Below, piece after piece: positions 14,600 to 61,566 of a DNA stretch of 64,000 nucleotides (the first letter of the stretch is position 1; each line of letters starts with the position of its first letter). The stretch spans positions 124,001 to 188,000 of IMG/VR virus record IMGVR_UViG_3300034072_001021. One strand, given 5' to 3'. The translations under genes were made by a program, and so were the position numbers. The notes beneath the pieces are model-generated. The model was not told where the DNA came from and did not search any database. It saw only the letters and a program-made list of their open reading frames with translations.

Positions 14600-15084
14600 C
14601 CTACGCGGATAGTGATAAAGCTATTCTGCAGAACCACATCGCTGCGGTAGACGGTTGGATCAGCCTCTATCGTAGCGATGCTGTCAACGATGCTGTTGGC
14701 GCTGTAGAAATGGTGTTCAATGAACAGATTCCTGAAATCAGGCGTATTCGCTGGTTCAGTATCGCAAGTCCTGTAGAACTGCTCAACCTGTGGACTCGTT
14801 TCATTGAAACCGATGATGCGAACAAAGAGCGTAAAGAGAGTGTCTTCGACTTCTATGTCAATGGCACTGCCTATATGCAGCTGATGGCACCAATCGCATC
14901 CGCACAGGCGGATTCGTTTTATGCGCATGTTGCACATTCGCTCACATGGACTCAGCGTGCGGGTGTAGTACCGGACATTGTCCGTGAGAACAGCACCACC
15001 AAAGAAAATACAGTGAAAATGTTGAAGGACAACCCCTGGGCTCTCTTTCTTATTTTGCTATCCTTGATTCCACCGCGAGTCTGA
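14596..15084 (+). CDS. Hypothetical protein (gp148 position)
   Basis: ATGA overlap with the upstream gene; hydrophobic C-terminus. Confidence 0.65.
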   Translation: MTYADSDKAILQNHIAAVDGWISLYRSDAVNDAVGAVEMVFNEQIPEIRRIRWFSIASPVELLNLWTRFIETDDANKERKESVFDFYVNGTAYMQLMAPIASAQADSFYAHVAHSLTWTQRAGVVPDIVRENSTTKENTVKMLKDNPWALFLILLSLIPPRV

Positions 15085-15111
15085 TTGCTCTTTGGTTCAA
15101 CGATACATTAT
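15083..15111 (+). promoter_or_regulatory. Putative early promoter GATT-N16-ATACATTAT
   Basis: Bipartite motif shared with six other sites. Confidence 0.55.
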
Positions 15112-15125
15112 CAAGAGGATAAATC

Positions 15126-15857
15126 GTGAGAACAGATCTTACGATGATGCTGCAAATCGATGCCCTCTTTGATACGAGGATGGGCACCCTGCTTAAGCTT
15201 GATCCCGACGTGATGAAACACATCGACATTGTAGAGTATCGCAACCGCAATATCGATGATTTCGAGAAAATCACAAAAGGGCGAGTGACCAATGATGCGT
15301 ACAAGGAAGCTTACGCCAAACGCGATAACGAGACTCTGAGTAAGAGTATCGTCACAGGCATCCTGCCAATCCTGGATACGTATCTCTCAAGCATCAGTGA
15401 ACGTTATACGCGCAAGATCGACATCACCTCGGTGAGGATCGACATCAACACGTATCCGTACATCCTGCCAGGCCCTACCATTCAGGACATCAGGTCAGTT
15501 ATGTCGGCTCTGCTGCCACATTACACGACCATTGGTGTAGTGCGTCTGAGTCCTCACGAACTCACCCCAGAATTCATGAAGCGCTGTTACAATGGCTGGG
15601 CGATCTATGACTTCAACGAATGGTTGGAGATTCATCATGAGCGCCTACTTGCCCACTCAATTAACAGCGTGTCGGCCATAATCCCCAGGGTCCATTTGAA
15701 GGACCCTGGGGAGTTCCAAGTCGATAACGAATTCTTCATGGAAGCAGATCGTCACGGCTTATTCGAAATGGTGATGGAAGACTTCATTCACCTGGAGTGT
15801 ATTCCGGCATCGGACTTTTCGTTCCTTATGCCTGGGACGTACAAGCCAGCGAATTAG
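15126..15857 (+). CDS. Hypothetical protein (gp147 position)
   Basis: 243 aa, GAGGA RBS before a GTG start. Confidence 0.65.
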   Translation: MRTDLTMMLQIDALFDTRMGTLLKLDPDVMKHIDIVEYRNRNIDDFEKITKGRVTNDAYKEAYAKRDNETLSKSIVTGILPILDTYLSSISERYTRKIDITSVRIDINTYPYILPGPTIQDIRSVMSALLPHYTTIGVVRLSPHELTPEFMKRCYNGWAIYDFNEWLEIHHERLLAHSINSVSAIIPRVHLKDPGEFQVDNEFFMEADRHGLFEMVMEDFIHLECIPASDFSFLMPGTYKPAN

Positions 15858-16372
15858 TCGTCGTCACCTTCGCGCAGTTGTCGTTCAGATTCTTCAACCG
15901 AGGTCACGAAGTCGTCGTAGTTGACCGACTGCGTGCCTTGGGCAGTGATGTCCGGAACCAGAGTAGGTTCAGGCAGTGCTGCAGGATCTGGACGAGTCAC
16001 GCGTGGAGCTTGAGCACCTGCTGTGATATCCACAGCAAATGGGTTCTTGCCGCCCAGCATACGAAGCAGTTCGTTCTGGGCATTAGCCAGACGCTGCGAT
16101 TCATCGACTTGGCGTTCTTCCACATCGATCTTACGTGTGGTGAGTGCTGCGGTATCCAGATCACGAAGGAGCGACACAAAGTCCCGACTATCTTTATCGA
16201 TCTTCGGTACACCGTGTTGAAGCTCTTTCTTAACCATCGCAATACGAATGCTTTGCGTGGTTTTGATTACTTCAAGAGGGTCTGTTGAATCGCTGATTTG
16301 AAACGGGCCTTCCGAAAGATATTCGGCTTCGGCCGGCATCAGCTCACCCTCAATTGGGTTGAGTTCTGACAT
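15854..16372 (-). CDS. Hypothetical protein
   Basis: ATG 16372 with AGGAG RBS; TATG motif at 16399-16402(-). Confidence 0.65.
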   Translation of the reverse strand: MSELNPIEGELMPAEAEYLSEGPFQISDSTDPLEVIKTTQSIRIAMVKKELQHGVPKIDKDSRDFVSLLRDLDTAALTTRKIDVEERQVDESQRLANAQNELLRMLGGKNPFAVDITAGAQAPRVTRPDPAALPEPTLVPDITAQGTQSVNYDDFVTSVEESERQLREGDDD

Positions 16373-16429
16373 CGGAAAATCTCCTAAAAATAGTCGCACA
16401 TAGGATCAGCGTGTGATTTCGGAGTATTT

Positions 16430-16909
16430 ATGATCAAGTGGTTAACAGGATGGCTGTTCGGAGGCAGCGAAGAACCGCCAGAAACAGAAGACATCTATCA
16501 GAAAATCATCGAGGAAATAGGAGCAGACAATGAACTAAGCGACCTAAATTTCATCCCGGTAAAATCCCGTTCAGTCCTTATGACGTCTACCAGTAAAAGC
16601 TTGGTAGAGTTGCAAGAACTGTTAATCGAAAGTGCAGTGATTGTTTCAAAGCAGGATTACATCCCAACCAAATGGAAAGGGAAGTACGCCACTGTGATGA
16701 CACAACCACTAGACACGTATATCAGCGATGAAGATGACATCCTCCATCCGTTTGACTGGATCGAGAATCATCGTCATTATATCATTAAACTCGTCGACGC
16801 CGTCCTTAAAATGGATCGTGCGGAACGCGAGTACTATCAGCGTTTCATCAACTTCATTATCGTCGATATTCTTAACCTGCTTAATGCAAGTAAGGAATGT
16901 GTGCGGTAA
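16430..16909 (+). CDS. Hypothetical protein
   Basis: GGAG RBS, 159 aa. Confidence 0.65.
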   Translation: MIKWLTGWLFGGSEEPPETEDIYQKIIEEIGADNELSDLNFIPVKSRSVLMTSTSKSLVELQELLIESAVIVSKQDYIPTKWKGKYATVMTQPLDTYISDEDDILHPFDWIENHRHYIIKLVDAVLKMDRAEREYYQRFINFIIVDILNLLNASKECVR

Positions 16910-16926
16910 TTCATCGAGAATGAATC

Positions 16927-27812: not shown

Positions 27813-29462
27813 ATGAACTACGCCGAAGTCCCTGCCAAGATCTGGCCAATGGTACTGACCAAAGAAAGGGTCGGTAGGATGACCCCGGTAACCAGTCTGG
27901 ACATCACAGACGGTGCCAGCAGTGAGTTCCACGATGAAGGTCTTTATTCGACCAAGATCTTTGGTCGAGTGGGATCTGAAGAACGTGATTACATCTTCTC
28001 ATACATCGATCTGAAAGTTCAGATTCTGCATCCCAAATTCTTCCGCGACCTCATGAGCCTCAAGTCGATTTACCGAGGCATTATTAGTGGTCGTGAGACT
28101 GCTATTTTTGACCCTGTGACAAAAGACTTTGTTGCAGATGTGTCCGAGAAGGCAGAGACTGGGTATAGTTTCTTTATCCGTCATCTGAAAGATCTGGAAG
28201 TGCGCAAGAGCAAGTCCCCAACTCGTGCCATTCGGGTTGAGTTCATCGAGAAGTACAAAAAAGATGCACTGACGCGTTACATCCCTGTGCTTCCGGCAGG
28301 CGTACGTGACATCGAGATCAGTGAATCTGGCATGGTGACCAAGAACGAGATCCATGACCTTTATTACCGAGCCCTGTCAATCTCCAACACCATCCCGGTT
28401 ACCAGTGACATGGAATCTCCTGCATTGGACATTGCCCGCATGGCACTGACCAATACGCTCATGGAGATCTACGAACTGATTGAAGGTATGTTGGCCGGTA
28501 AGAACGGTTTTATCATGGATAAGTGGGCTGCTCGTCGAGTGACCTACGGTACTCGAAATGTACTGACCGTGATGGACACCTCCATCGCTCATCTCGATGA
28601 TGCCAACGCACCTGGTTTCGATGCAACGACGTTGGGATTGTTCCAAGTTATTAAAGGCATGACCCCACTGACCATTCACTACCTGCGTAACATGATCGCT
28701 CCTCTTGTTCAGGCAGGTGAGGGTCAAGCACGTCTGATCGATCCCAAGACACTGAAACCAAAATGGGTAGCGCTGTCTCCAGAGGCCCGCGATACCTGGA
28801 GTACTCGTGATGGCTTAACGTCCGTTATCGATCGCTACCAGATGCTGGATGCGCGTAATCGTCCAGTCGAGATCGAAGGTCATTATCTGGCCCTCATCTA
28901 TAAAGGTCCTGACAAGACGTTCAAGATCTTTTACGACATCGACGAAATGCCTGCTCATCTGGATCGCAGTCACGTCAGTCCGATCAATCTGGTCGAGCTG
29001 CTGTATCTCTGCGGCTACCAGAAGTGGAACAAGTACTTCTCCCAGATCACCCGTTATCCGATCTCCGGTAAGCGTTCTATTTACGCCAGCCGCATTTACG
29101 TGAAAACGACCGTGGTGGGCGAGAAACGCACCGAGCTGAATGACATGTGGGAACCTCATGAAGATCCCGAATATGTTGCGCTCGAGTTTCCGATGACGGG
29201 TTCGACATCCTTTATGGATACGCAGTCTCCACACAGTACTAAGCTCGCAGGTCTTGCGGCTGACTTCGACGGTGACACCGGTTCTGCCACAATGGTCATG
29301 TCTAACGAGGCATGTGCTGAGAACGATCGTGTTCTGCGCTCTCGCAACTATTGGGTCGATACCGACGGTAGCCTCATGTCGTCGTATGACTACGATACCA
29401 TCAAGTACGTAACTACGAACCTTACAGGACGATTTAAACATGGCCGTAATGCTTCAATATGA
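27813..29462 (+). CDS. Virion RNA polymerase beta' subunit, N-terminal/catalytic part (gp180-like)
   Basis: GLYSTKIFG, PVLPAGVR, GKNG, TRYP and the catalytic ADFDGD. Confidence 0.92.
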   Translation: MNYAEVPAKIWPMVLTKERVGRMTPVTSLDITDGASSEFHDEGLYSTKIFGRVGSEERDYIFSYIDLKVQILHPKFFRDLMSLKSIYRGIISGRETAIFDPVTKDFVADVSEKAETGYSFFIRHLKDLEVRKSKSPTRAIRVEFIEKYKKDALTRYIPVLPAGVRDIEISESGMVTKNEIHDLYYRALSISNTIPVTSDMESPALDIARMALTNTLMEIYELIEGMLAGKNGFIMDKWAARRVTYGTRNVLTVMDTSIAHLDDANAPGFDATTLGLFQVIKGMTPLTIHYLRNMIAPLVQAGEGQARLIDPKTLKPKWVALSPEARDTWSTRDGLTSVIDRYQMLDARNRPVEIEGHYLALIYKGPDKTFKIFYDIDEMPAHLDRSHVSPINLVELLYLCGYQKWNKYFSQITRYPISGKRSIYASRIYVKTTVVGEKRTELNDMWEPHEDPEYVALEFPMTGSTSFMDTQSPHSTKLAGLAADFDGDTGSATMVMSNEACAENDRVLRSRNYWVDTDGSLMSSYDYDTIKYVTTNLTGRFKHGRNASI

Positions 29463-32400
29463 CCGCTATGTGAAGTTGTTCGGTGTGCGTCGATTGGGAG
29501 AACTCGAGAATCCTCGGGTTCGTCCCATTGCTCGCTTCGGTCTTCCGAGGGGCGCCACAGTTCACTACATGCCTGTTTCTGAGACCGAACTCGGTCCTAG
29601 CAACGACCATCCGATCATTGCTGCTGCGCAGCGACTGGTCTACATCGACCATGTATCCGATCTGCTGTCTAAGGAAGGTAACCCACGCCCAACCTTTAAG
29701 CTGATCGGTCCGATGATGCAACAATATCGTCGCGACAACATGATGATTCGTCCTGTCCGGGATTATGAGGCCACTACTCGTGACATCCTGAATATGGTCG
29801 TGGTCAACTATTCCATGGTTGCCCAGATGTACAAATACCAGCGCTCGGCACTGAGTCGTTGGTGGTTCTGGAAGAACATTCGTTCGACCATGTGGGAAAA
29901 GTGTAACCAGCTTCAGTCTCCGCACGAACGCCATCAGGTAATCGTGTTCGATGTCCCTCAATCGTTGCCTGCCCTGGCAGATCTGCGTAAAGCAGAACGC
30001 AACATGACCCCGATGCTCATGAAAGTGTTCAACTCTCGTGAACGTCTGGATCTGCTGGACATCTTCACTTGGTTGGGCGAACATCGCGAACGTTCTCCGA
30101 TGTCTCGTTTGGATGAAAGTCGTCTGAACGAGATCGATCTGATGATCCGTCGTGATACCGGTTTCATCACCATCAACCTCGGCCTGCTGAACAGCTGGCG
30201 TAAAGAAGGCAAGGTTCCGTCAATGGAATCTCTGGCCATTCTTCCGGAAGACAATTTCGATTTCGAATCTAAGTACATGGAGTATATCTCCATGGAAATG
30301 AACGACGATCGCACTCCGGTGGACGACGGCTACGATGTGTCGATGGAAGCCGCGCAAGGTTTCGATCCGAAGATCCTGCAAATGCGCTTCCTGAAAATGC
30401 TGGTCAAGATCATTCATCAGACCAGTCCGGTCGTTGAAATGACCGACGAGCAATCTGAAGAAGGCCAGACCGAAACCACGGCTGAGAAAGAAGAAGAACT
30501 GATCGAAGAAAACCAACAGATTCTTGAGGCTACTGGTGCTCTGGATGAATTGGTAGCTGACGAGGAAGAAGAGCTGGCGGAATCGCTCGATGCTCCTGCT
30601 GAAGCTGATGAATCGATCATGACTGACGAAGATGGCGAACTCATCATCGAGACGTCACAGCCGGTCGAAGTCAATGTTCAAGCCGTGGGTAACTACGGTG
30701 TCGAGAACACACTGACCAGCGCGATTGTCAGTAAGGCCGACGAGCTGGTGGATAAGCAGATTTACACCGCTGCCCAATACCGCCGTATGCTTCGCTTGGC
30801 TGAATCGTTCAAATCCATCCAGAACCCCTGGGGTGGTAACGAAACGATCGAACAATACATGGAGATCAAGCAAGAAGATCTCGTGATGACTGAGGTGGAC
30901 AACTATCCGAAGCTCGATGCCGTTCGAGACGAATCTATGCTGCAATCCAGTGTAGAGAAAATGGATAGTCAGTATGTTGAGAAAGTCATGAAGAAAGACA
31001 TTCTCAACGCTGTGATGTCGGTACAGAAAGCCGGCGTGGCAGTTACTGGTTACGAAGTGGAGGTTGTCCGCAACGCGGTCAGCAACTACGAAGTCCATTC
31101 AGTTCAACTCACCCCGGTAACGGGCAAACCGTCGACTATTCGTTTCCGTGTACCGGTTGTTGACAAGCGTGGCGTTTACACCTCCAACGGTCAGCGTTAT
31201 CGGATGCGTACCCAGAAGGGCGATATCCCAATCCGTAAAGTCAGTCCGAGTCGTGTGGCACTGACCTCTTACTACAGCAAGGTCTTCGTTGACCGTTCTC
31301 AGCGTAGCGTGTTTAACTACGATAACTGGATCGGCAAACAGATCAAGGCTAAAGGATTGAATCCCGACGACACCACCATCACTAACTTGAAGATTGCTAA
31401 CGTTGCAGACTTCGAGCTGGACGTACCGACCATCTATACGGTGATTGGTAGTCAGGTGATGAGTTTCGAATCCAGCGGTAGCTACTGGTTCGATTACAAG
31501 AACCGTGAACGTAGCCGTCTGTTCGACATGGCTGTGGTGGAAGAGCTGGAAGCCAAGCACAAGGGCATGGTGGTCGTTGGTCGTCGTGATCAGCGTTACA
31601 TCATGGTTGGGCGCGACGATGCGTTTTACCTGATGGATGCTAAGACAGACCGTGTCACCGAACTGGGTCATATCGAGGACATCCTCGGTCTTGAGAAAGA
31701 CAAGGCTCCGATCAGCATGGCTGAGATGAGCATATTCGGCAAAATCATGCCTGTCGGTATCGCTCTGGCGTATCTGATCGGTTTCGATAACTTGCTGGAA
31801 ATGACCAAGGTCAAGTACCGTGCAGTTCCGGTGGGCACTCGGGCTCAGATTGCAGACGATGAGTTTGCAGTTAAGTTCCTCGATGAAACTCTGATCTTTG
31901 ATAAGAGCGACGTCAAGAACAGCCTGATCTTCGGCGGCTTCGTCCACTATCAGAAACAAATCCGCAACTACAGTCGTCACAGCTTCAAGACCAAAGACGT
32001 GTACTTCACGGTTCTGGAAGCAAACGGCATCGGCCTGCGCTACTTGCGTGAGCTGGATCTGATGAACGCCATGTGGGTCGACCCGATCACCAAAGGCGTG
32101 TTGGAATGGATGAAGGAACCGACTGAATACGTGCCATTGCTGATGCGTGCGTGTGAACTGCTGGTGACTCGTTACGTTCCCAACAAGATCGAAACGACTG
32201 ACGGCCTGGTGGAAGGCATGGAACGTGCTAAGGGCTACGAACGTATTCCTGGTGCTGTCTACGCTGAATTGGTTCGTTCCATCCGAGTGTACAACTCTCG
32301 GTCGGCCTCGAGTTCTTCTCAGGTCACGATGAAGCCGCACGATGTCTGGACTGCTATTGTTCAAGACCCTGCTGCTGCGCTGGTGGACGATATCAACCCA

Positions 32401-33816
32401 ATCCAGAACCTCAAGCAAAAAGAAATCATCACGTACGGTGGCCGTGGCGGCCGCAGTGGGCGTTCGATGACTGCTGAAGCCCGTCTCTATAAGGAAGGAG
32501 ACATTGGCTTCATTTCGGAGAGTACTGTTGACTCGGGTGACGTGGCAGTAATCACGTACATGACACCCAACGCGAACATCACCAGTGTGCGCGGTACGGT
32601 CAGGTCGTTCGATAAAGAGAAAGACGGTTCTGCGTCGCTGGTTTCGACCTCGGCTCTGATTTCGCCTTTCGCTGACCGAGACGACCCTAAGCGGGTAAAC
32701 TTCATCGGTATCCAACAATCGCACGTAATCAGTGCGAAGGGCTACCGTGAGTCTCCGATCTGTACGGGTTATGATCATGTACTGGCACACCGCGTGGATG
32801 ACATCTTCGCCCTGCCAGCTGAAAAGGACGGTGAGGTGGTTGGACTCTCCGATACTCACATGGTCGTGGCTTATGATGACGGTACGTTTGAGCACGTTGA
32901 CCTTGAAACGCAGTACGGTATCTCTGCAGGTTCCGTATATCCGCAACATCAGGCAACGACGTTCACTCTGGGCGAGAAGGTTAAGAAGGGCGATATCCTG
33001 AAGTACAACGCAGGGTTCTTCAAACCGAGCCGATTCCATCGTCATCAAGTACAGTGGATGGCAGGCGTCATTGCACGCACAGCTCTGATGGAAGCCAGCT
33101 ACACGCTGGAAGACTCCTCAGCTATCGACGACTGGTTGTCTGACCAGCTGGGATCGGAAATCACCAAAGTGAAAACCATCACAGTACGGTTCGACCAGAC
33201 CATTCGGAATCTCGTAAAAGTGGGAGACCACACGGACATCTCGAGTATTCTATGCACGATAGAAGATGCTGTAACAGCTGATTCAGGTCTGTTCAACGAT
33301 GATGATCTCGACACACTGCGTCTGATGTCATCCGCCACTCCGTTGGCTGGTGCTGTGGGTGTAGTGAGTAACATCGAGGTCTTCTATCATGGTGATCCCG
33401 ACGACATGTCCGACTCGTTGCTCGAACTGGTAACAGCCAGCGACAAACGTCGTCGTAAGAAAGCCAAGGCCTTGGGTCAACCTGCTGTCACTGGTCAGGT
33501 CGATCAGTCACTCCGCATCGAAGGTGATGGTCTCGAACTCGATCACGTTGCCATTAAGATCTACATCACTCACCATGAAGGGATGGGTGTCGGCGACAAG
33601 GCCGTGTTCTGTAATCAGATGAAAACGGTTGTTGGTCATCGCTTGAGCGGTGTCAACGAAACGATCTCTGGTCGTCAGATCAATGCCATCTTCGGCGCTA
33701 AGTCCGTCATGGACCGCATCGTTCTATCACCAATGCTGATCGGCATGTCCATCTCGCTGATGACAGCTATTGGTGAGAAAGCCGCAGAGATGTGGATGAG
33801 TAATGACACCAAGTAA
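29440..33816 (+). CDS. Virion RNA polymerase beta subunit, large part (gp178-like)
   Basis: 1458 aa; PFADRDDPKR, EDS, GDK..FCNQMK RpoB-type motifs; acidic N-terminal linker with SME sites. Confidence 0.9.
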   Translation: MAVMLQYDRYVKLFGVRRLGELENPRVRPIARFGLPRGATVHYMPVSETELGPSNDHPIIAAAQRLVYIDHVSDLLSKEGNPRPTFKLIGPMMQQYRRDNMMIRPVRDYEATTRDILNMVVVNYSMVAQMYKYQRSALSRWWFWKNIRSTMWEKCNQLQSPHERHQVIVFDVPQSLPALADLRKAERNMTPMLMKVFNSRERLDLLDIFTWLGEHRERSPMSRLDESRLNEIDLMIRRDTGFITINLGLLNSWRKEGKVPSMESLAILPEDNFDFESKYMEYISMEMNDDRTPVDDGYDVSMEAAQGFDPKILQMRFLKMLVKIIHQTSPVVEMTDEQSEEGQTETTAEKEEELIEENQQILEATGALDELVADEEEELAESLDAPAEADESIMTDEDGELIIETSQPVEVNVQAVGNYGVENTLTSAIVSKADELVDKQIYTAAQYRRMLRLAESFKSIQNPWGGNETIEQYMEIKQEDLVMTEVDNYPKLDAVRDESMLQSSVEKMDSQYVEKVMKKDILNAVMSVQKAGVAVTGYEVEVVRNAVSNYEVHSVQLTPVTGKPSTIRFRVPVVDKRGVYTSNGQRYRMRTQKGDIPIRKVSPSRVALTSYYSKVFVDRSQRSVFNYDNWIGKQIKAKGLNPDDTTITNLKIANVADFELDVPTIYTVIGSQVMSFESSGSYWFDYKNRERSRLFDMAVVEELEAKHKGMVVVGRRDQRYIMVGRDDAFYLMDAKTDRVTELGHIEDILGLEKDKAPISMAEMSIFGKIMPVGIALAYLIGFDNLLEMTKVKYRAVPVGTRAQIADDEFAVKFLDETLIFDKSDVKNSLIFGGFVHYQKQIRNYSRHSFKTKDVYFTVLEANGIGLRYLRELDLMNAMWVDPITKGVLEWMKEPTEYVPLLMRACELLVTRYVPNKIETTDGLVEGMERAKGYERIPGAVYAELVRSIRVYNSRSASSSSQVTMKPHDVWTAIVQDPAAALVDDINPIQNLKQKEIITYGGRGGRSGRSMTAEARLYKEGDIGFISESTVDSGDVAVITYMTPNANITSVRGTVRSFDKEKDGSASLVSTSALISPFADRDDPKRVNFIGIQQSHVISAKGYRESPICTGYDHVLAHRVDDIFALPAEKDGEVVGLSDTHMVVAYDDGTFEHVDLETQYGISAGSVYPQHQATTFTLGEKVKKGDILKYNAGFFKPSRFHRHQVQWMAGVIARTALMEASYTLEDSSAIDDWLSDQLGSEITKVKTITVRFDQTIRNLVKVGDHTDISSILCTIEDAVTADSGLFNDDDLDTLRLMSSATPLAGAVGVVSNIEVFYHGDPDDMSDSLLELVTASDKRRRKKAKALGQPAVTGQVDQSLRIEGDGLELDHVAIKIYITHHEGMGVGDKAVFCNQMKTVVGHRLSGVNETISGRQINAIFGAKSVMDRIVLSPMLIGMSISLMTAIGEKAAEMWMSNDTK

Positions 33817-39750: not shown

Positions 39751-39759
39751 TTTTGATTC

Positions 39760-39788
39760 GATTCGAAATATTTTCAACAATACATAGT
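39760..39788 (+). promoter_or_regulatory. Putative early promoter GATT-N16-ATACATAGT
   Basis: Bipartite motif in AT-rich intergenic DNA heading an accessory operon. Confidence 0.7.
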
Positions 39789-39844
39789 AACGTTGAATAG
39801 GAAGAATGATCTTCCAATAACCAAGTGTTCTCAGGAGAACAACC

Positions 39845-40845: not shown

Positions 40846-40855
40846 GTTTCCGTTC

Positions 40856-40884
40856 AATTCAACTAAAATTCAGATACACATTAT
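40856..40884 (+). promoter_or_regulatory. Putative early promoter variant AATT-N16-ACACATTAT
   Basis: Same spacing, with TTCAG upstream of the core. Confidence 0.6.
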
Positions 40885-40987
40885 CAACCTGCTTAACACT
40901 AGCATTGGTAAAATAAAACCATGCGAGCTATTGTTGTGCGTTAAACACGTGTTCATAAAACCGCAATACATCCTAGGAGTTACACCA

Positions 40988-42603: not shown

Positions 42604-42604
42604 A

Positions 42605-43000: not shown

Positions 43001-43030
43001 GGCTCCGGATTTTATTTCTTTTTTTGTTTC

Positions 43031-43059
43031 GATTGGACTTAAAGACAACAATACATAAT
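43031..43059 (+). promoter_or_regulatory. Putative early promoter GATT-N16-ATACATAAT
   Basis: Bipartite motif immediately after a terminator. Confidence 0.7.
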
Positions 43060-43094
43060 AGCGTTGACTTAACCAAATAGCTGAGGCGCTAATT

Positions 43095-47535: not shown

Positions 47536-47591
47536 GCCCTTGCCCTACTAACAGTAGGATTCGGTAATCGATGAATTCGATACCACCACCA

Positions 47592-47600
47592 CATACTATT
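47592..47600 (-). promoter_or_regulatory. Putative late promoter AATAGTATG
   Basis: Upstream of the sheath gene. Confidence 0.55.
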
Positions 47601-47639
47601 TTGTAATTTTTTACAAGGTACGCTCGGAGAAGAAGGAAA

Positions 47640-48575: not shown

Positions 48576-48599
48576 ACATAAATCCAACAGGTGGATGTC

Positions 48600-51167: not shown

Positions 51168-51206
51168 ACCCACGGAGCACGGGGGTAAAAGCCCCCGTGA
51201 TAATAC

Positions 51207-52883: not shown

Positions 52884-52887
52884 TATA

Positions 52888-52919
52888 TCAGCACCGGAGG
52901 GACATCCCTCCGGTGCTGA
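52888..52919 (+). terminator. Hairpin
   Basis: TCAGCACCGGAGGGA-CA-TCCCTCCGGTGCTGA. Confidence 0.65.
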
Positions 52920-52934
52920 GTATTTGGAGTTCTT

Positions 52935-55151: not shown

Positions 55152-55187
55152 CGGCATAGAGGGAGGCTCAGGCCTCCCTCTATGCCG
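55152..55187. terminator. Bidirectional hairpin, archetype of the CGGCATA family
   Basis: CGGCATAGAGGGAGGC-TCAG-GCCTCCCTCTATGCCG, perfect 16-bp stem with no U-tract. Confidence 0.8.
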
Positions 55188-55189
55188 GA

Positions 55190-56059: not shown

Positions 56060-57318
56060 CACGACTTCCTGTAATGCTTCATGGTGACCGTCCGAATGAC
56101 AAGATACAGGATAGCCCCCGTCCTGATCGAAGCCACCAAAGCGTCGTTCTTCGTCTTCACTGACTTGCGCACTACTTTCTCGCCCACGTCACGCATCTGC
56201 AGAAGCAGATCGTTATTGGCACGAGAGGCAGTATAGAGGTTGCGCAGTTTGGTCAGCACCGTAGCAATATCATTCACATTGATCGACGAACGGTTAGACG
56301 CAATGAAATCGAACAGATGCTCGAGAGTGAGGTCTGCCAGTTTCACGACGTTCGGATCGCCTTTCAGCTTAGACGAATGACGAGCCATGTATTCGAGACA
56401 TTCCATCATGTTGTGGTATGGAAGCTTGGGCATGCAACCAGCTACGATCTCCGCGAGTTCACGGACGATGAAGCTGTTGCGGTCGGCCATTACTTCCTCA
56501 AGGTAACGGCGATAAGTCGAATACATGTTCTTACGGTTTTTCACCACGATCTCACCGTCAATGTTGACCGATGTGTTCGAGGTGGTACGGATGACAGCAG
56601 TCGGATCTCTCCGGACGATTTCGAATTCGTCACGAATGTTACGCAGGTATCCCTTGATTCGACTTTGGATGTCGTTCACCATGTAGATGATGTCGTAATC
56701 GTCGTCGAATTGTTGGAACGTCTTGTTGAGGAAGTGGGGAGAACGTTTGTCGATGGTCTGCTCAGCGCGATACTGAAGCAGAGCACCCCACGAGCCCAAT
56801 TCCTTGAGCTTGTACTTCTTGGGCAAACGAGCATAGGTAGCTACAGCCACTGCTTCGTCTGCACGGTTCGGGAACCAGTACGTCAGGATCGAGGTGATGA
56901 ACTTGTATTGTAGTACCAGCAGTGCGTCGATCATGCCCGAGTGTTTCTCGGTCTCGGTCAGCTTGGAGCGAGAAATAGCGTGCACGACCCACAGACACGA
57001 CAGGTTCATGACGTCAGTGGAGACGTAACGTGGTTTCTTGGGATCGGGTACCAGTGTCTTGAGCTTCAGCAGGTCGTCTTGCAGAGCTGCATCGTCGATG
57101 TCAAGGATGCTGGTGAACCATTCGATTCGGTCGGCTTTGGTGAAGCGGACATCCTGCACACCCATCAGGTGACCGCCGAAGAAAGCAACGTGATCGTCGT
57201 TCTTGTTGGCGAAGTTCTGGCGATAGGTTTGCAGGCGACGGAGGAAATTCTTGTCGATAGCGATGTCTTTGCACGCTTCGTCAAACAAGGACTTCACAGT
57301 AGGTGTAGTGCCTGACAT
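56059..57318 (-). CDS. Conserved-looking jumbo-phage protein of unknown function
   Basis: 419-aa helical ORF; AGGA RBS; TATG motif ~35 nt upstream. Confidence 0.65.
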   Translation of the reverse strand: MSGTTPTVKSLFDEACKDIAIDKNFLRRLQTYRQNFANKNDDHVAFFGGHLMGVQDVRFTKADRIEWFTSILDIDDAALQDDLLKLKTLVPDPKKPRYVSTDVMNLSCLWVVHAISRSKLTETEKHSGMIDALLVLQYKFITSILTYWFPNRADEAVAVATYARLPKKYKLKELGSWGALLQYRAEQTIDKRSPHFLNKTFQQFDDDYDIIYMVNDIQSRIKGYLRNIRDEFEIVRRDPTAVIRTTSNTSVNIDGEIVVKNRKNMYSTYRRYLEEVMADRNSFIVRELAEIVAGCMPKLPYHNMMECLEYMARHSSKLKGDPNVVKLADLTLEHLFDFIASNRSSINVNDIATVLTKLRNLYTASRANNDLLLQMRDVGEKVVRKSVKTKNDALVASIRTGAILYLVIRTVTMKHYRKS

Positions 57319-57367
57319 GGGTCTTATCCTGTTGAGAAACAGTTACCGGGATTCATAGCGATAGGTC

Positions 57368-57396
57368 GATTCAAAAATAATTCAACCATACATTGT
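57368..57396 (+). promoter_or_regulatory. Putative early promoter GATT-N16-ATACATTGT
   Basis: Bipartite motif. Confidence 0.7.
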
Positions 57397-57462
57397 AAAG
57401 GGGAAGAAAGCGAATACAAACGCGATCATCAAGACATAACCAGCACCAATGGAGTGACAGCA

Positions 57463-58044
57463 ATGCAACAGCAATCCGTACTTCCAGCTATTGTTACCCG
57501 TCATCTCGCTGACAGCGAAGCTGACTTCATCGACCTGTCCAATCTGGAACTGGTCATGGATCAAGAAGAACAAAGCAACAAGGGGATCACCGTGAAGCAA
57601 GAAAGGACGCTGTCTGGCGCAAACATCACCGATCATGGCAAGGGTACTCTGAGTAGTCGTATCTGCCAGATCGCCCACGACTGTCTGCATGTTGATCTTC
57701 AGACCGAGTTCCGTGAAATGGCTATGAGTCATCCGGCGTTCGTGAAGATCTGCGACGAGATCCGTCAGGAGATCGAAGAAGGTCGGATGATCCAGATCAT
57801 GGATCGTCTCGAAGCTATCGGCTGCGAGGTCTTCTATGACCGCAAAGAAAAGAAACTGACCCTGGGGCTGAACAAGAAGAACCTGTTCAAGCATTTCAAC
57901 GAACACTCGCGGGTCATCGACCTGCGTAACCGTCAAGGCATCAGCATCGTTAATGGGATTAACCCCATGTACGACAAAGAGCCGAAACATCAAGTACCTG
58001 AATTGGTGACCAAGTCTTACTACTTGATCATCGATCTGAAATAA
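57463..58044 (+). CDS. Hypothetical early protein
   Basis: GGAG RBS at ATG 57463. Confidence 0.7.
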   Translation: MQQQSVLPAIVTRHLADSEADFIDLSNLELVMDQEEQSNKGITVKQERTLSGANITDHGKGTLSSRICQIAHDCLHVDLQTEFREMAMSHPAFVKICDEIRQEIEEGRMIQIMDRLEAIGCEVFYDRKEKKLTLGLNKKNLFKHFNEHSRVIDLRNRQGISIVNGINPMYDKEPKHQVPELVTKSYYLIIDLK

Positions 58045-58053
58045 CCCCCTTTC

Positions 58054-58127
58054 AAGATCTCTGCTGAGCCTGAGCCGGTTAGCAGCACCCCCTTGCTTTC
58101 GCAACCGGTGCCCAGAGATCTTTTTTT
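58054..58127 (+). terminator. Long composite hairpin with U-tract
   Basis: AAGATCTCTG/CAGAGATCTT outer stem; CCGGTT/AACCGG and AGCA/TGCT inner stems. Confidence 0.6.
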
Positions 58128-58145
58128 GTTTAAGGAGCTAGGAGC

Positions 58146-58550
58146 ATGCTAGAGGAGATTGTGAAGGACTTCAAAAGCATCGTTACCGACTATCAGTCCT
58201 ATCCTTCAGAAGACGTCATTCCTAAAGATGTCCATGAACGACATTCCAAACTAGCAGCCAAGTGTGTCCTTGAGACTATGCGGTTGTTAGTGGGGTATGA
58301 CGAGACTGTGATGAATCTTCCAATGTCTGCGTTCCTGAAGTACCTTGAACACATTCGCATGGATGTCTTCGAGGAATTGGCTAAGGAAGGTATCGCATTC
58401 CACTACTACTACCACAATGGCCTGCTCTACGGCAGACTGGTGGATCAGACTCAAGTCATGGTCATGTACCCTGTGACCACTACACAGCAGACTCCTCTGG
58501 TCCGTCAGTTCATTGATGGGTTTGAGATTAAGGAATCAACGATCCATTAA
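58146..58550 (+). CDS. Hypothetical protein
   Basis: AGGAG RBS, 134 aa. Confidence 0.7.
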   Translation: MLEEIVKDFKSIVTDYQSYPSEDVIPKDVHERHSKLAAKCVLETMRLLVGYDETVMNLPMSAFLKYLEHIRMDVFEELAKEGIAFHYYYHNGLLYGRLVDQTQVMVMYPVTTTQQTPLVRQFIDGFEIKESTIH

Positions 58551-58558
58551 ACCGATAC

Positions 58559-58597
58559 GATCACTGCTCTTAACGGGGCAGTGATCTATTCTTTTTT
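58559..58597 (+). terminator. Intrinsic terminator
   Basis: GATCACTGCTC...GGGCAGTGATC followed by a T-tract. Confidence 0.7.
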
Positions 58598-58616
58598 GTT
58601 TAATGGGGAGTTCTGT

Positions 58617-58813
58617 ATAGTATGATCAGTCTTGCTACTTTTCTTGGGAAGGAAGGGAAAGGGGGTAAGATTGATGACGAACGGAGTGAGGAATCAATCT
58701 GGGGGATAGGGTAGGTAGGGTATATCTGCGTGGTTGGTGGATAGCCGTAGCGTAGCGTAGGGTAGACAACAGACACCATGCCTTATTCTCTTCTGAGGGG
58801 GCATAGCCCCCTC
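58617..58813 (+). other. Non-coding G-rich structured element (candidate origin, packaging site or ncRNA)
   Basis: Six G3-G5 tracts flanking a GNA-triloop/sheared-GA hairpin; CC(GTAGC)2GTAGG; closed by GAGGGGGC-ATA-GCCCCCTC. Confidence 0.5.
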
Positions 58814-58887
58814 TATATATAGACCGGCCTGACGTACCAAACTATATCAGGTTTTCCGTAAAAGAAAAAAAGTTTAAGAGTGCCGCC

Positions 58888-59304
58888 ATGAATCCTTTTG
58901 CATCGTTGGAAAGTATCCTCTCCCCTCAAGGTGAACCGGAAGCTCCGTCTATCGGTCTGCTGGTAGAGGACTGGGATGAGAACCTGAGACATGATGTCCA
59001 ACAGATCGTGGACACTGGGTATCAGGTGGTGGTGATTCCTACTGGCTCAACTTCGATGGAAGTCAAGAGTGCAGATGAAGAACAAATGGGTACGGGTGAT
59101 CCTGTCTCCATGATAGAACTGGATCATCACGAGCCTCGTGTCCTGTTCTACTACAAAGGTAAGCCCGAGAATGCTGCTGAAGGCATCCCTGTGCTGATCG
59201 TGGAAGAAGGCAAGGTGAAAGTGGACATGGAGGGTCGGGTCAAGGAGTTGGCTGAGCATTTAGGACTGCTTGATGAGGAATTCGACTATGTGGATCGTTG
59301 TTGA
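58888..59304 (+). CDS. Acidic hypothetical protein, possibly head-associated
   Basis: N-terminal ASLES motif. Confidence 0.6.
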   Translation: MNPFASLESILSPQGEPEAPSIGLLVEDWDENLRHDVQQIVDTGYQVVVIPTGSTSMEVKSADEEQMGTGDPVSMIELDHHEPRVLFYYKGKPENAAEGIPVLIVEEGKVKVDMEGRVKELAEHLGLLDEEFDYVDRC

Positions 59305-59605
59305 AGCAATACTGATCACAATTGTCGTAGCGCTGTCTCTCTGGCCCTACATCACCCACTTCATCCGTGAGAAGAAATTCCACGGAGCTTGTTACGAGAT
59401 GGGTGTGGCGTACATTGAAGTGTTCTACCAGACGATCAGACATCGTTTCGTAGATGCGATAGGTACGCTGGCATTGTTGTTCTTGCTGTGTGCCGTATTC
59501 AGTAACTTTGCCATCGCTATGGCCATCTATTTCATCCACATCATGATCGTGGGTAAGATAGCTATCCATTACGGACATGAGCCTGGTAGTGTCGAGTGGA
59601 AATAG
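59288..59605 (+). CDS. Multi-pass membrane protein
   Basis: GAGGA RBS at ATG 59288; about 3 hydrophobic segments. Confidence 0.6.
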   Translation: MWIVVEAILITIVVALSLWPYITHFIREKKFHGACYEMGVAYIEVFYQTIRHRFVDAIGTLALLFLLCAVFSNFAIAMAIYFIHIMIVGKIAIHYGHEPGSVEWK

Positions 59606-59634
59606 TAGGGAGGGCATTTGCCCTCCCTATGCCG
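59606..59634 (+). terminator. Hairpin with TATGCCG flank
   Basis: TAGGGAGGGCA-TT-TGCCCTCCCTA then TGCCG. Confidence 0.7.
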
Positions 59635-59638
59635 AGTG

Positions 59639-59667
59639 GATTGAACCAATACTGAAAGATACATTAC
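59639..59667 (+). promoter_or_regulatory. Putative early promoter GATT-N16-ATACATTAC
   Basis: Bipartite motif. Confidence 0.7.
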
Positions 59668-59719
59668 AGAGGGGATATGGAGAATGACTCTCCATCACCT
59701 ATGGTCTCAGGAGACTTAC

Positions 59720-60052
59720 ATGTCCATCATTCAGATGTTCGATTATTCCATCAGTGCTCTGACGGTAGTGTGCTACCTGCTCAGTGTGATCATGACCGTC
59801 AAATACGGTAATGAGTCCTGGAAGGGCTATTGCATCATGACTCACAAGGTCATGGCTCAGTCTTTCTTCAGCAAGACCTGGATCGCTGCGGTGAATATCA
59901 TCGCCCTGGCGTCCTTGTTCTCTGCCTTGTTTTATTTCAAGGTCTACGCCTTTGTTGTGGTGAATGTCATTCTGCTACTGGTCACGATTGTGGTGTCTGT
60001 GATCGGTGAAGAGGTGATCGACCGCGAATCCAACCATGCCGAAGATCAATAG
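59720..60052 (+). CDS. Multi-pass membrane protein
   Basis: AGGAG RBS at ATG 59720; 3 hydrophobic segments. Confidence 0.65.
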   Translation: MSIIQMFDYSISALTVVCYLLSVIMTVKYGNESWKGYCIMTHKVMAQSFFSKTWIAAVNIIALASLFSALFYFKVYAFVVVNVILLLVTIVVSVIGEEVIDRESNHAEDQ

Positions 60053-60060
60053 GAGATCTC

Positions 60061-60549
60061 ATGCACCTCAATCAAGCCATCGACAGTTTCAATGATGCTG
60101 TCCATTACGTAGGTAAGTACTACGGCTGGATCGCTGATGCCACTCTCTACCTACCGTTTACCTTCTTGCTTCTACGGCAAGGCCATCAGGCAGCAACAGC
60201 TTATCCGGAAACGATATCGCATGCGAAGTACTTATTCGGTCCCGCGTGCATCAATCGTCTCTTGGTAGTATCAGACGACAACATGCCTCAGATGGATCGT
60301 CAACTGCGCATGGACATCGAAGAGGTGTTCAAGGTGGTCGCGTTTGAACTGAACTACCTGATGGATAAGGTCAGGAGAGTCGAAAACAAGATGCCGTGCG
60401 TCAATGAGATGGGCCGTTTGATCATGGCATTCAAGGACACGTTCAGTGGCATGCATATGCGACAAGTGGAATCTGAACTGGCGATCAATTACCTGCGCGA
60501 GTGCCAGAACAGTTACTTGGAAGCACGACTCACCTGGTTCACTAAGTGA
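60061..60549 (+). CDS. Hypothetical protein
   Basis: AGGAG RBS, 162 aa. Confidence 0.65.
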   Translation: MHLNQAIDSFNDAVHYVGKYYGWIADATLYLPFTFLLLRQGHQAATAYPETISHAKYLFGPACINRLLVVSDDNMPQMDRQLRMDIEEVFKVVAFELNYLMDKVRRVENKMPCVNEMGRLIMAFKDTFSGMHMRQVESELAINYLRECQNSYLEARLTWFTK

Positions 60550-60551
60550 CG

Positions 60552-60590
60552 CGACATAGGTAGGGGCACTGGCCCCTACCTATGCTTTTT
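60552..60590. terminator. Hairpin with CGACATA flank and T-tract
   Basis: CATAGGTAGGGGC-ACTG-GCCCCTACCTATG then CTTTTT. Confidence 0.8.
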
Positions 60591-60602
60591 CTTTGGTTAA
60601 AA

Positions 60603-61427
60603 TTAACGCTTAGGGCCAACGATATAGCGAAGCAGTCTGCGATGCTGCTCTTTGTTTGCCATGACCGATGCCTTTCTCCATTTGTCACGGAGATGCTCTT
60701 TGTACATGGTGTTGGCATCGGCGTACGAATCAACGATCTCACGAATACGGCCTAGCGAGGCACCACCACGGATAGCACCTTCATCGAGTTCGATGATAGC
60801 GCGGTTGTAGATGAATGCTTTCGTAGCCAGAATAACCAATTCGGTGAACGGATCTGCAAAACTGGACGGGATGTTCTGCAGGTTCGGATCGTGACTGACC
60901 AGACAACGCAGATAGGCAATGCCGGGGATGCGTGCCATGTTGGTAACCATGACAGTGTTGTCGGCTACCAGTGTGCAGTAGGCAGTCTGGAGTTGAGTCC
61001 ACGGGATGTTGGACTGAATGACCCCCTGAACAGCTTCCAGAACAGCTGAACGATCTTCAGAGATCACACCGGTATGACCTAGTGCATGACCTTGACCATA
61101 ACCCACGCCGTAGACTTCAGTGATACTGCGACCTTGAGTCAGATCTTTAGGGATACGGTAGATCATCGTCCAGTTGTCGACACGCTCAACCTCAGCGTTG
61201 TTCAATGGGACGAAGATCTCGACACCGGAACTGAGATCCAGGTCAACCAGCACACGGGCTTCAATGACCTGACGACGAATCACTGTGTCAGTGCTGATGC
61301 CGGTGCTGTAATCACGTACGAGGCCGTCTTTGGTCGGATCGTAACGCGTCGGTGAAAAGGTGTAACGAAGCACTTCACGAGGGATTTCGAACTTAACCCT
61401 GTCCAGTGCAACCGTGATAAGATCCAT
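60603..61427 (-). CDS. Conserved-looking jumbo-phage protein, probably virion assembly
   Basis: 274 aa, GAGGT RBS, divergent from phuZ. Confidence 0.6.
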   Translation of the reverse strand: MDLITVALDRVKFEIPREVLRYTFSPTRYDPTKDGLVRDYSTGISTDTVIRRQVIEARVLVDLDLSSGVEIFVPLNNAEVERVDNWTMIYRIPKDLTQGRSITEVYGVGYGQGHALGHTGVISEDRSAVLEAVQGVIQSNIPWTQLQTAYCTLVADNTVMVTNMARIPGIAYLRCLVSHDPNLQNIPSSFADPFTELVILATKAFIYNRAIIELDEGAIRGGASLGRIREIVDSYADANTMYKEHLRDKWRKASVMANKEQHRRLLRYIVGPKR

Positions 61428-61537
61428 GGATGCAAACCTCTATAAACAAAAGTACACATGATTGGTTTCCAATCTATGTGCTAAATGGCTATCTTTGTTT
61501 GACCTTCATAGGTCATGACCCATTTCGATCTGAAGGA

Positions 61538-61566
61538 TAATCGAATATTCTACGGGAATACATTAT
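61538..61566 (+). promoter_or_regulatory. Putative early promoter TAAT-N16-ATACATTAT for phuZ
   Basis: Perfect core with a degenerate upstream element. Confidence 0.6.

What the first reader, a model, noticed from the sequence alone, without database searches (positions are those of the whole stretch)
15083..61566. Bipartite early promoter with invariant 16-nt spacer: GATT-N16-ATACAT(T/A)RT
Seen at 7 intergenic sites on the + strand: 15083, 39760, 40856 (AATT/ACACAT), 43031, 57368, 59639 and 61538 (TAAT). The spacer is exactly 16 nt at each, and TTCA(A/G) often precedes the core. Most sites follow a hairpin or a divergent gap and head accessory operons or phuZ. Known: PhiKZ early promoters read by the virion RNAP have a TATATTAC-type core. 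Inference: this is the phage's vRNAP promoter, with a diverged core and a second fixed-distance element. That implies two-point recognition by an RNAP with no known sigma factor, and a possible orthogonal expression system.
Basis: partly seen in the sequence, partly recalled or inferred. Interest (0 to 1): 0.65.

Follow-up and report, generated by a model that had tools for sequence, protein, structure and literature searches.

The report
Jumbo phage early promoter motif
The repeated signal is real and is very probably this giant phage's set of early promoters, read by the RNA polymerase it carries in its particle; it has the same layout as the known early promoters of phage phiKZ, so it is a new example of a known kind.

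Summary
All seven sites exist at the stated coordinates, and they are the only sites of this class in the window. The window lies in a 259-kb phiKZ-like (nucleus-forming) phage genome whose nearest record is Pseudomonas phage pPa_SNUABM_DT01. Genome-wide the class has 29 members. All are on the + strand, all are intergenic, and 26 lie 40-112 nt upstream of a + strand gene.

The spacing is fixed, but 'GATT' misdescribes the upstream element. The informative bases are T-22, A-19, T-18, T-17 and A-14, counted from the first core base. The G carries 0.15 bit. A conserved TG follows the core, with the G as the seventh base after it.

The sites precede the nuclear shell gene, phuZ and all three non-virion RNA polymerase operons. 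They are absent before the virion RNA polymerase genes. Thirteen orthologous sites in DT01 keep exactly these positions while the flanks have diverged.

The consensus aligns without gaps to the phiKZ early promoter (24 of 39 bases). Erwinia phage RAY and Xanthomonas phage LucasX share the same geometry. So this is the early, virion-polymerase promoter, but the second element is a family trait, not a new one.

No transcript ends could be checked.

The parts
15081..15118 (+). Promoter 1. Upstream element 15081-15090, core 15103-15111, predicted start G 15118. It heads the 237-aa gene at 15144-15857 (phrog_3328, unknown function).
   Evidence: Matrix score 32.5 bits. The orthologous DT01 site is at 76082. 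The upstream element is weak here (-0.6 bit) despite an exact GATT. It abuts the stop codon of gene 14596-15084.
39758..39795 (+). Promoter 2. Upstream element 39758-39767, core 39780-39788, predicted start G 39795. It heads the 124-aa gene at 39845-40219.
   Evidence: Matrix score 47.8 bits. It belongs to the terminator-promoter-leader cassette family. A terminator hairpin at 39720-39744 with tail TATGCCG lies just upstream.
40854..40891 (+). Promoter 3 (AATT / ACACAT variant). Core 40876-40884, predicted start G 40891. It heads the gene at 40988-41467 (phrog_9746, unknown function).
   Evidence: Matrix score 33.6 bits. The orthologous DT01 site at 101500 has CATT / ATACAT. A hairpin plus T-tract at about 40816-40845 precedes it.
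43029..43066 (+). Promoter 4. Core 43051-43059, predicted start G 43066. It heads the 465-aa gene at 43095-44492.
   Evidence: Matrix score 41.0 bits. A terminator-like hairpin at 42986-43011 with a T-tract precedes it. DT01 has a site at 103731, 51 nt before PA10_00107, whose C-terminus matches this gene.
57366..57403 (+). Promoter 5. Core 57388-57396, predicted start G 57403. It lies in a divergent gap and heads the gene at 57463-58044.
   Evidence: Matrix score 44.1 bits. The orthologous DT01 site is at 118378. The neighbouring - strand gene is 56059-57318.
59637..59674 (+). Promoter 6 (core ends in C). Core 59659-59667, predicted start G 59674. It heads the 110-aa hydrophobic protein gene at 59720-60052.
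   Evidence: Matrix score 25.6 bits. A terminator hairpin at 59607-59628 with tail TATGCCG precedes it. A leader stem-loop lies at 59677-59695.
61536..61573 (+). Promoter 7 (TAAT variant). Core 61558-61566, predicted start at 61571-61573. It lies in a divergent gap and heads phuZ at 61632-62621.
   Evidence: Matrix score 24.9 bits. The orthologous DT01 site at 124377 keeps TAATCGAA and the core while the spacer differs. The downstream gene is PhuZ: phrog_4733 at 3.6e-70 and Pfam Tubulin.
39800..39815 (+). 5' leader stem-loop (6-bp stem, 4-nt loop) at +6 to +21 of the predicted transcript from promoter 2.
   Evidence: Fold of -11.9 kcal/mol for the leader, z = -2.07. It is a member of a leader family with compensatory changes across relatives.
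13895..14599 (+). Virion RNA polymerase beta-like subunit gene (the presumed reader enzyme). No motif lies in front of its operon.
   Evidence: phrog_3233 at 9.4e-72. The DT01 orthologue gp082 is assigned to the virion RNAP (PMC8541153). The upstream gap at 11869-11960 scores -8.1 bits.
27813..33816 (+). Two virion RNA polymerase subunit genes (27813-29462 and 29440-33816), next to the gp181-like tail lysin gene. No motif lies upstream.
   Evidence: phrog_2986 at 1.4e-186 and phrog_3148 at E = 0. The DT01 orthologues are gp092 and gp093. The upstream gap scores -5.8 bits.

Best explanation
These are the phage's early promoters, 29 in the genome and 7 in the window. They are most likely read by the multisubunit RNA polymerase that is packaged in the virion and injected with the DNA.

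Each promoter spans about 38 bp. In start-site coordinates it reads:
- T at -37, ATT at -34 to -32 and A at -29;
- a T-rich stretch ending in TTCAAC, at about -24 to -17;
- the core ATACATWRT at -15 to -7;
- six bases of which the last is usually T;
- G at +1.

Spacing between the blocks is fixed. The blocks are centred near -33, -22 and -11, so they are about one helical turn apart and would face one side of the DNA.

Shown here: the motif, its strand and position bias, its fixed spacing, its conservation at orthologous sites, the genes behind it, and its ungapped match to the phiKZ early promoter.

Inferred: that it is a promoter, that the G is the start site, that the virion enzyme reads it, and that the upstream blocks are contacted.
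For: 1. A discrete class. 29 sites score at least 20 bits, and no other + strand position scores between 8 and 20 bits. All are on the + strand and intergenic, and 26 of the 29 have the core 40-112 nt before the next + gene. The core words are the most enriched 7-mers in upstream regions.

2. A phylogenetic footprint. At 13 orthologous sites in DT01 (downstream proteins 31-77% identical), flank identity is about 0.3. It rises to 0.92 at T-22, 0.85 at A-19, 1.0 at T-17, 0.92 at A-14, 0.77-1.0 (mean 0.94) across the core, and 0.92 at G+15.

3. Gene class. Sites head the nuclear shell gene plus an RNAP beta gene. They also head the RNAP beta/beta' pair and the operon holding the phiKZ gp123-like subunit. 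Together these cover all four non-virion RNAP subunits assigned in DT01 (PMC8541153). In the window they head phuZ and six genes with no known function. The virion RNAP operons have no site. In phiKZ and AR9 the non-virion subunits are early genes and the virion subunits are not (PMC7598289, PMC5312081).

4. Homology to a mapped promoter class. The phiKZ TATATTAC sites (33 on +, 9 on -) show tATTcAAA, ATTTaAAc, the core and N5-TG. Consensus against consensus gives 24 of 39 identical without gaps. Any other register gives 7-15. In phiKZ the start site is 6 nt after the element (PMC5312081).

5. The same geometry elsewhere. It appears in RAY, whose core word CCTACATTA was found de novo at 14 on + and 0 on -, and in LucasX.

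6. Uncultivated relatives. At least 12 phage contigs of 80-277 kb carry 2-5 exact copies of the two-part pattern, always on one strand. In them the unspecified positions are conserved (TTTCAAC, GTGA). In single-hit contigs, taken as a group, they are not.

7. Count. 29 sites is close to the 28-32 early promoters reported for phiKZ (PMC10914365, PMC13282480).
Against: - There is no transcript evidence.
- The matrix was trained on the sites it scores, which inflates their scores. The DT01, IMG/VR and cross-validated spacing results are the independent checks.
- Some sites are paralogous cassette copies, so within-genome P values overstate independence.
- Several real-looking sites, including 15103, have a weak upstream element. 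It may therefore modulate strength rather than be required.
- phuZ lies behind a site with the weakest fit, and there the base at +15 is A.
- The matrices for RAY and LucasX were seeded with this phage's matrix, which favours the same register.
Confidence: 0.8

Rival explanations
1. They are promoters for the second, non-virion phage RNA polymerase (a middle class), not for the injected enzyme.
For: The sequence alone does not say which phage polymerase reads the site. phuZ and the shell gene are needed beyond the first minutes. In 201phi2-1 some non-virion RNAP subunit genes are reported behind middle or late promoters (PMC11512511).
Against: - All non-virion RNAP subunit operons lie behind the motif, so that enzyme could not make itself from these sites alone.
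- The motif aligns with the phiKZ early class, not with the published middle class (a weak AT-rich patch at -24) or late class (TATG) (PMC7598289).
Confidence: 0.08
2. They are binding sites for a phage or host regulator, or the conserved ends of a mobile terminator-promoter gene cassette. On this view the real promoter lies elsewhere.
For: Six to eight sites sit in a repeated cassette of terminator, motif, leader hairpin and a small gene. The downstream proteins in these cassettes are unrelated. TTCGAA in the upstream element is a palindrome.
Against: - Most sites are not cassette copies, yet they keep the same positions.
- Conservation is asymmetric and always co-oriented with the gene.
- The inverted repeat around the core shows no covariation.
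- The match to mapped phiKZ promoters includes the start-site TG.
Confidence: 0.05
3. They are host sigma-70 type promoters used before the phage enzymes take over.
For: The geometry resembles a -35/-10 pair. Part of the core (TACATT or CATTAT) matches TATAAT at 4 of 6 positions, including the A and the final T. TCGATT lies 17 nt upstream and matches TTGACA at 3 of 6 positions (my own reading of the sequence).
Against: - None of the four sites in 42001-62000 passes a 9-of-12 sigma-70 scan with the core as the second hexamer.
- Such matches are depleted in that region: 6 found against 17.7 +/- 4.2 in shuffles.
- The best conserved bases (ATAC at -15 to -12, T-32, A-29) are not sigma-70 determinants, and the G expected in a -35 hexamer is uninformative here.
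- Related phages develop without host RNAP (PMC13282480).
Confidence: 0.04
4. The conserved block acts at the RNA level, as a leader or processing signal, on transcripts that start further upstream.
For: Many sites are followed by a conserved 5'-proximal hairpin.
Against: - Terminator hairpins lie immediately upstream of many sites. Two window sites sit in divergent gaps with no upstream + strand transcription unit.
- Conservation stops at the G and resumes only in a subset of leaders.
- No Rfam family matches the window.
Confidence: 0.03

Closest known systems
phiKZ early promoters (virion RNAP; core TATATTAC, start site 6 nt downstream)
   Same: - The layout and register are identical: ATT at -34 to -32, A at -29, ATTT-AAC at -24 to -17, TA-AT in the core and TG at -1/+1.
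- 24 of 39 consensus bases are shared without gaps.
- The number per genome is similar and the strand bias is strong.
- Sites often sit just after a hairpin with a TATG-type tail.
   Different: - The 3' half of the core differs (WRT against TAC), and C replaces T at the third core base.
- The upstream element reads TCGATTCGAA rather than tATTcAAA.
- The host genome context is GC-richer (51% against 37%), so the motif stands out more.
- No start sites have been mapped for this phage.
Early promoter motifs predicted here in Erwinia phage RAY and Xanthomonas phage LucasX
   Same: Both show T and A at -17 and -14 from the core start, TTCA-type bases before the core, a core of type CTACATTAC or CTATAnTAC, and N5-TG. 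LucasX even has TCGATT at the same offset.
   Different: - The core letters differ.
- The exact shared word ATTCRAA-N14-TAYAT is absent from both genomes.
- These motifs are my own predictions. I did not check whether the literature already describes them.
AR9 early promoters (AAATATATATTAT-(6N)-G)
   Same: An extended, highly conserved AT-rich element, then six bases, then a G start. They are read without new protein synthesis (PMC5312081).
   Different: AR9 has a uracil-containing genome and is outside the nucleus-forming family. No sequence alignment was attempted here.
Bacterial sigma-70 promoters
   Same: Two blocks near -35 and -10 with a strict spacer.
   Different: The consensus differs, conservation between the blocks is continuous, and the start base is conserved. 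The criteria are not met in the scan. No sigma homologue is known for the virion enzyme (PMC13282480).
N4 virion RNAP hairpin promoters
   Same: They are read by an injected virion polymerase. In a subset of sites here an inverted repeat flanks the core.
   Different: N4 uses a single-subunit enzyme and a DNA hairpin. Here the repeat shows no covariation and is present (at least 5 of 7 pairs) in only 12 of 55 sites.

Membership tests
Early (virion RNAP) promoters of phiKZ-like jumbo phages | An over-represented, highly conserved AT-rich element of about 9-10 nt in intergenic DNA, co-oriented with the downstream genes. | tested here: met
   The core occurs 21 times on + and 0 on -. There are 29 matrix sites, all intergenic. 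The core words are the top enriched 7-mers.
Early (virion RNAP) promoters of phiKZ-like jumbo phages | The element is centred near -10, with a conserved start base 6 nt downstream. | tested here: inconclusive
   The sequence signature is present: T and G at +14 and +15 carry 0.93 and 1.35 bits, and the G is 0.92 identical between orthologous sites. The start site itself could not be mapped.
Early (virion RNAP) promoters of phiKZ-like jumbo phages | The phage encodes two sets of split beta/beta' RNAP subunits, one of them virion-borne. | tested here: met
   PHROG RNAP beta families match seven genes. There is synteny with DT01, where the genes are assigned to the virion and non-virion sets (PMC8541153). 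Virion location rests on homology only.
Early (virion RNAP) promoters of phiKZ-like jumbo phages | The motif precedes the non-virion RNAP subunit genes and many genes of unknown function, and is absent before the virion RNAP and structural genes. | tested here: met
   All three non-virion RNAP operons have the motif in both phages. The virion RNAP gaps score below -5 bits. No - strand gene cluster, including the sheath, tube and tail lysin genes, has a convincing site: the best - strand scores are about 12 bits, against at least 20 bits for all 29 sites.
Early (virion RNAP) promoters of phiKZ-like jumbo phages | Sequence and register are homologous to the phiKZ early consensus, including the -20 and -30 blocks. 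| tested here: met
   24 of 39 bases are identical in register 0, against 7-15 in the shifted registers. The shared columns across five phages are shown.
Early (virion RNAP) promoters of phiKZ-like jumbo phages | Transcripts appear at once after infection, without phage protein synthesis, and are rifampicin-resistant. | not testable with these tools
   No sequencing runs could be obtained.
Sigma-70 type host promoters | TTGACA-N16-18-TATAAT with at least 9 of 12 matches, with A at position 2 and T at position 6 of the second hexamer. | tested here: not met
   No motif site in 42001-62000 qualifies with its core as the second hexamer. The region is depleted in such matches: 6 against 17.7 +/- 4.2.
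phiKZ late promoters (non-virion RNAP) | TATG overlapping the start site, with no conserved upstream sequence. | tested here: not met
   The motif has about 30 bits of upstream information and no TATG at the predicted start.
N4-type hairpin promoters | A DNA hairpin maintained by complementary arms. | tested here: not met
   Six of the seven candidate pairs are no more complementary than shuffled columns. One has P = 0.012, uncorrected.

The most novel reading that the evidence does not exclude
The upstream ATT...A block lies exactly two helical turns before the core. It may be the family-wide anchor for promoter recognition by the injected polymerase, or by a co-injected factor, while the core letters drift from genus to genus.

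If so, a sigma-less multisubunit RNAP would read a phased, one-sided promoter of about 38 bp with strict spacing. Promoter specificity between jumbo phages would then be set mainly by the 3' half of the core. Promoter swaps between this phage and phiKZ would test this directly.
Probability: 0.35. Interest if true: 0.5.

Novelty: new member of a known kind. Interest (0 to 1): 0.3.

Why it matters
- It gives the early promoter consensus, and a list of 29 predicted early transcription units, for a little-studied lineage of nucleus-forming Pseudomonas phages: the DT01-like group and at least a dozen uncultivated relatives. The DT01 genome paper does not mention promoters.
- It marks which genes are probably expressed from the injected DNA before the phage nucleus forms. 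These include seven operons in this window.
- The comparison of five phages shows which promoter positions stay fixed while the rest change. How the virion enzyme recognises promoters is still open in a 2026 review (PMC13282480), so this is a useful guide for mutagenesis.
- As an orthogonal expression system it is a distant prospect. The enzyme has at least five subunits, any specificity factor is unknown, and no purified or reconstituted virion enzyme is cited in the papers read here.

Tried and rejected
- Read evidence.
- Supplementary promoter tables of the phiKZ and 201phi2-1 transcriptome papers are not held. The 2014 phiKZ transcriptome paper is not held either.
- Hairpin idea. The inverted repeat TTCAACA / TGTTGAA around the core looked like an N4-style hairpin or a dimer site. 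Across 55 sites it shows no covariation, so I treat it as two independently conserved blocks.
- TAACC as a second promoter. The word is enriched in leaders (23 of 55 sites). However, it sits 18-28 nt before start codons and also occurs before genes without the motif, so it belongs with translation signals rather than this promoter.
- LucasX word TACTACGA(C) (TACTACGAC: 10 on +, 0 on -). All contexts look coding, so it is not a promoter.
- The shared word ATTCRAA-N14-TAYAT gives no exact hit in RAY or LucasX. The shared geometry shows only at matrix level.
- RNAalifold predicted no consensus structure for the leader family. The helix was then tested by explicit pair counts.
- Rfam gives no match in the window.
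- A literature search for the core words found nothing relevant.
- Two weak - strand matrix hits (genome 234781 and 37449) overlap or abut + strand sites and are artefacts.

Full report
**Setting.** The window is bases 124001-188000 of a single 259,140-bp contig with 51% G+C. Its nearest public record is Pseudomonas phage pPa_SNUABM_DT01, at 76% nucleotide identity around phuZ and 84.6% amino-acid identity in the large terminase. The next relatives are at about 42% (LucasX, FLC9, RTH11), and phiKZ-type phages are at 39.6%. Gene order matches DT01: tail lysin, virion RNA polymerase subunits, sheath and tube, terminase, phuZ. PHROG scans confirm PhuZ and three RNA polymerase beta-type genes in the window. 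This is therefore a nucleus-forming, phiKZ-like jumbo phage of the DT01 lineage.

- The exact pattern occurs four times in the window; 100 shuffles gave none.
- The three degenerate sites are as described, except that the core at 59639 ends in C.
- A weight matrix built from the sites finds exactly these seven in the window. Their scores are 24.9-47.8 bits, and the next + strand score is 6.7 bits, inside a gene.
- Across the genome the nine-base core occurs 21 times on the + strand and never on the - strand.
- The matrix finds 29 sites. All are on the + strand and all are intergenic by my own gene calls. In 26 of them the core lies 40-112 nt before the next + strand gene.
- A word count that knew nothing of the motif ranks ATACATA and ATACATT as the most enriched 7-mers in upstream regions.

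**The spacing is fixed, but the element is misnamed.**
- With sites defined by the core alone, GATT starts at -20 in 9 of 21 and never at -19 or -21.
- I scored each phage's upstream block with the other phage's matrix over offsets of +/-6 nt. Offset 0 wins in 17 of 19 sites here and 19 of 20 in DT01.
- In the combined 55-site logo the informative upstream bases are T-22 (1.0 bit), A-19 (1.35), T-18 (0.84), T-17 (1.56) and A-14 (1.76). The G at -20 carries 0.15 bit.
- A T-rich stretch ending in TTCAAC fills the gap to the core.
- After the core come five weakly conserved bases, then T (0.93 bit) and G (1.35 bit).

**Conservation between phages.** DT01 has 26 matrix hits, all on the + strand. 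Thirteen of them lie before orthologues of the genes that follow sites in this genome; those proteins are 31-77% identical. In ungapped comparison of the pairs, flank identity is about 0.3. The same few positions stand out: 0.92 at T-22, 0.85 at A-19, 1.0 at T-17, 0.92 at A-14, 0.77-1.0 (mean 0.94) in the core and 0.92 at G+15. This footprint does not depend on the paralogous copies within one genome.

A scan of IMG/VR for GATTCGAA-N12-ATACATNNT adds further evidence. It finds at least 12 contigs of 80-277 kb with 2-5 hits each, always on one strand per contig. In those contigs the unspecified positions show TTTCAAC and GTGA. In the single-hit contigs taken as a group they show nothing, although a few of those are real relatives.

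**Genes behind the sites.**
- In the window: phuZ and six genes without any Pfam family. Four of them also have no PHROG family, and two match only PHROGs of unknown function.
- Elsewhere in the genome:
  - the nuclear shell gene followed by an RNA polymerase beta gene;
  - a beta/beta' pair;
  - an operon holding the phiKZ gp123-like subunit.
- DT01 has sites at the same three places. Its authors assign those four genes to the non-virion polymerase (PMC8541153).
- The gaps before the virion polymerase genes score below -5 bits. No - strand cluster, including the sheath, tube and tail lysin genes, has a convincing site: the best - strand scores are about 12 bits, against at least 20 bits for all 29 + strand sites.
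- This is the division of labour described for phiKZ and AR9. There the injected enzyme transcribes early genes, including those of the second polymerase (PMC7598289, PMC5312081, PMC13282480).

**Comparison with phiKZ.** TATATTAC occurs 33 times on the + strand and 9 times on the - strand of phiKZ. Its flanks give tATTcAAA, then ATTTaAAc, then the core, then N5-TG. I aligned the two consensus strings with the TG in register. 24 of 39 bases agree without a gap, while any shift of 1-4 nt gives 7-15.

The published phiKZ start site is 6 nt after the element (PMC5312081). The G here is therefore the likely +1. That places the core at -15 to -7, ATT at -34 to -32 and A at -29.

RAY yields CCTACATTA de novo, 14 times on + and 0 on -, with T and A at the same upstream offsets and TG at the same downstream offset. 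LucasX shows TCGATTnAAA, a CTATAnTAC core and N5-TGA. The second element is therefore a trait of the family. This fits the published remark that phiKZ and 201phi2-1 early promoters are conserved at -10, -20 and -30 (PMC11512511).

**Mechanism.** The best reading is a promoter of about 38 bp read by the injected polymerase. Its conserved blocks are centred near -33, -22 and -11, about one helical turn apart, so they would face one side of the helix. Which protein touches the upstream blocks is unknown. Recent reviews still list no specificity factor for the virion enzyme (PMC13282480).

**Rivals.**
- A sigma-70 reading fails the consensus scan. Such matches are depleted in 42001-62000, with 6 found against 17.7 +/- 4.2 in shuffles.
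- A non-virion polymerase reading faces a bootstrapping problem, because every subunit of that enzyme sits behind the motif.
- A hairpin or dimer-site reading fails the covariation test.

**Limits.**
- No transcript data could be obtained. Promoter activity, timing and the start base are all inferred.
- Gene calls are my own simple model, checked against DT01 annotation.
- The matrices for RAY and LucasX were seeded from this phage.

**Side findings.**
- Terminators here are GC-rich hairpins followed by TATGCC(G) rather than a U-tract.
- About half of the predicted early leaders begin with a stem-loop. One leader family shows compensatory changes.

Noticed in passing
window 6765, 39744, 55181(+)/55153(-), 59628, 62661 (+); 10995, 44504 (-); 46 intergenic cases genome-wide: Terminator-like elements are strong GC hairpins (-19 to -27 kcal/mol) followed by TATGCC(G) instead of a U-tract. 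Several are perfect palindromes that read the same on both strands. RAY has the near-identical tail CTTTATGCCG; LucasX (GGCTTTATG) and phiKZ (ggctttatg) share the CTTTATG part. The tail contains TATG, which is the phiKZ late-promoter word. Whether that is a coincidence was not examined.
   Followed up: partly
window 39795-39826 and 59674-59705; genome 54910, 59486, 105233, 252581; DT01 100754, 227596; many IMG/VR loci (alignment A1): A subfamily of the predicted early transcripts starts with a conserved 5'-terminal stem-loop, of the type GA(A/G)UAGGAAGA-AUGA-UCUUCCUAUC.
- 52 of 112 leaders have a 5'-proximal hairpin, against 22.7 +/- 4 in shuffles.
- In 31 aligned members, 74.8% of cells pair, against 44-50% in slid controls.
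- One pair alternates AU (10), GC (10) and GU (5).
It may be an mRNA-stabilising or regulatory leader. There is no Rfam match in the window.
   Followed up: partly
genome-wide; in the window e.g. 39817-39822, 43070-43075, 57438-57442: The word TAACC(A) lies 18-28 nt upstream of start codons in 11 of 26 motif-bearing leaders, and before 21 of 146 other genes, just ahead of the ribosome-binding site. Its function is unknown.
   Followed up: partly
genome 54910, 59486, 105233, 163780 (window 39780), 183659 (window 59659), 252581: Near-identical cassettes of terminator, promoter and leader precede unrelated small genes. Several encode short hydrophobic or lipoprotein-like products of 46-110 aa. 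This looks like a portable early-expression cassette.
   Followed up: partly
window 42001-62000: Sigma-70-like consensus matches are depleted: 6 found against 17.7 +/- 4.2 in shuffles. This fits a genome not read by the host polymerase.
   Followed up: no
G000:C1:226811 (outside the window); DT01 150910: These are rare exceptions to the fixed spacing. At 226811 the best upstream element lies 5 nt closer to the core. At DT01 150910 it lies 1 nt closer.
   Followed up: no
IMG/VR contigs behind loci L074-L153, e.g. 3300011868_000001 and 3300014063_000001: At least a dozen uncultivated phage contigs of up to 277 kb carry the same two-part motif several times on one strand. The DT01-like lineage is therefore much larger than its single close public isolate genome (DT01).
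   Followed up: partly
whole genome: All 29 sites are on the + strand. The 58 - strand genes, which include the tail, baseplate and lysin genes, have none. My word counts found no comparable motif that would mark middle or late promoters.
   Followed up: no
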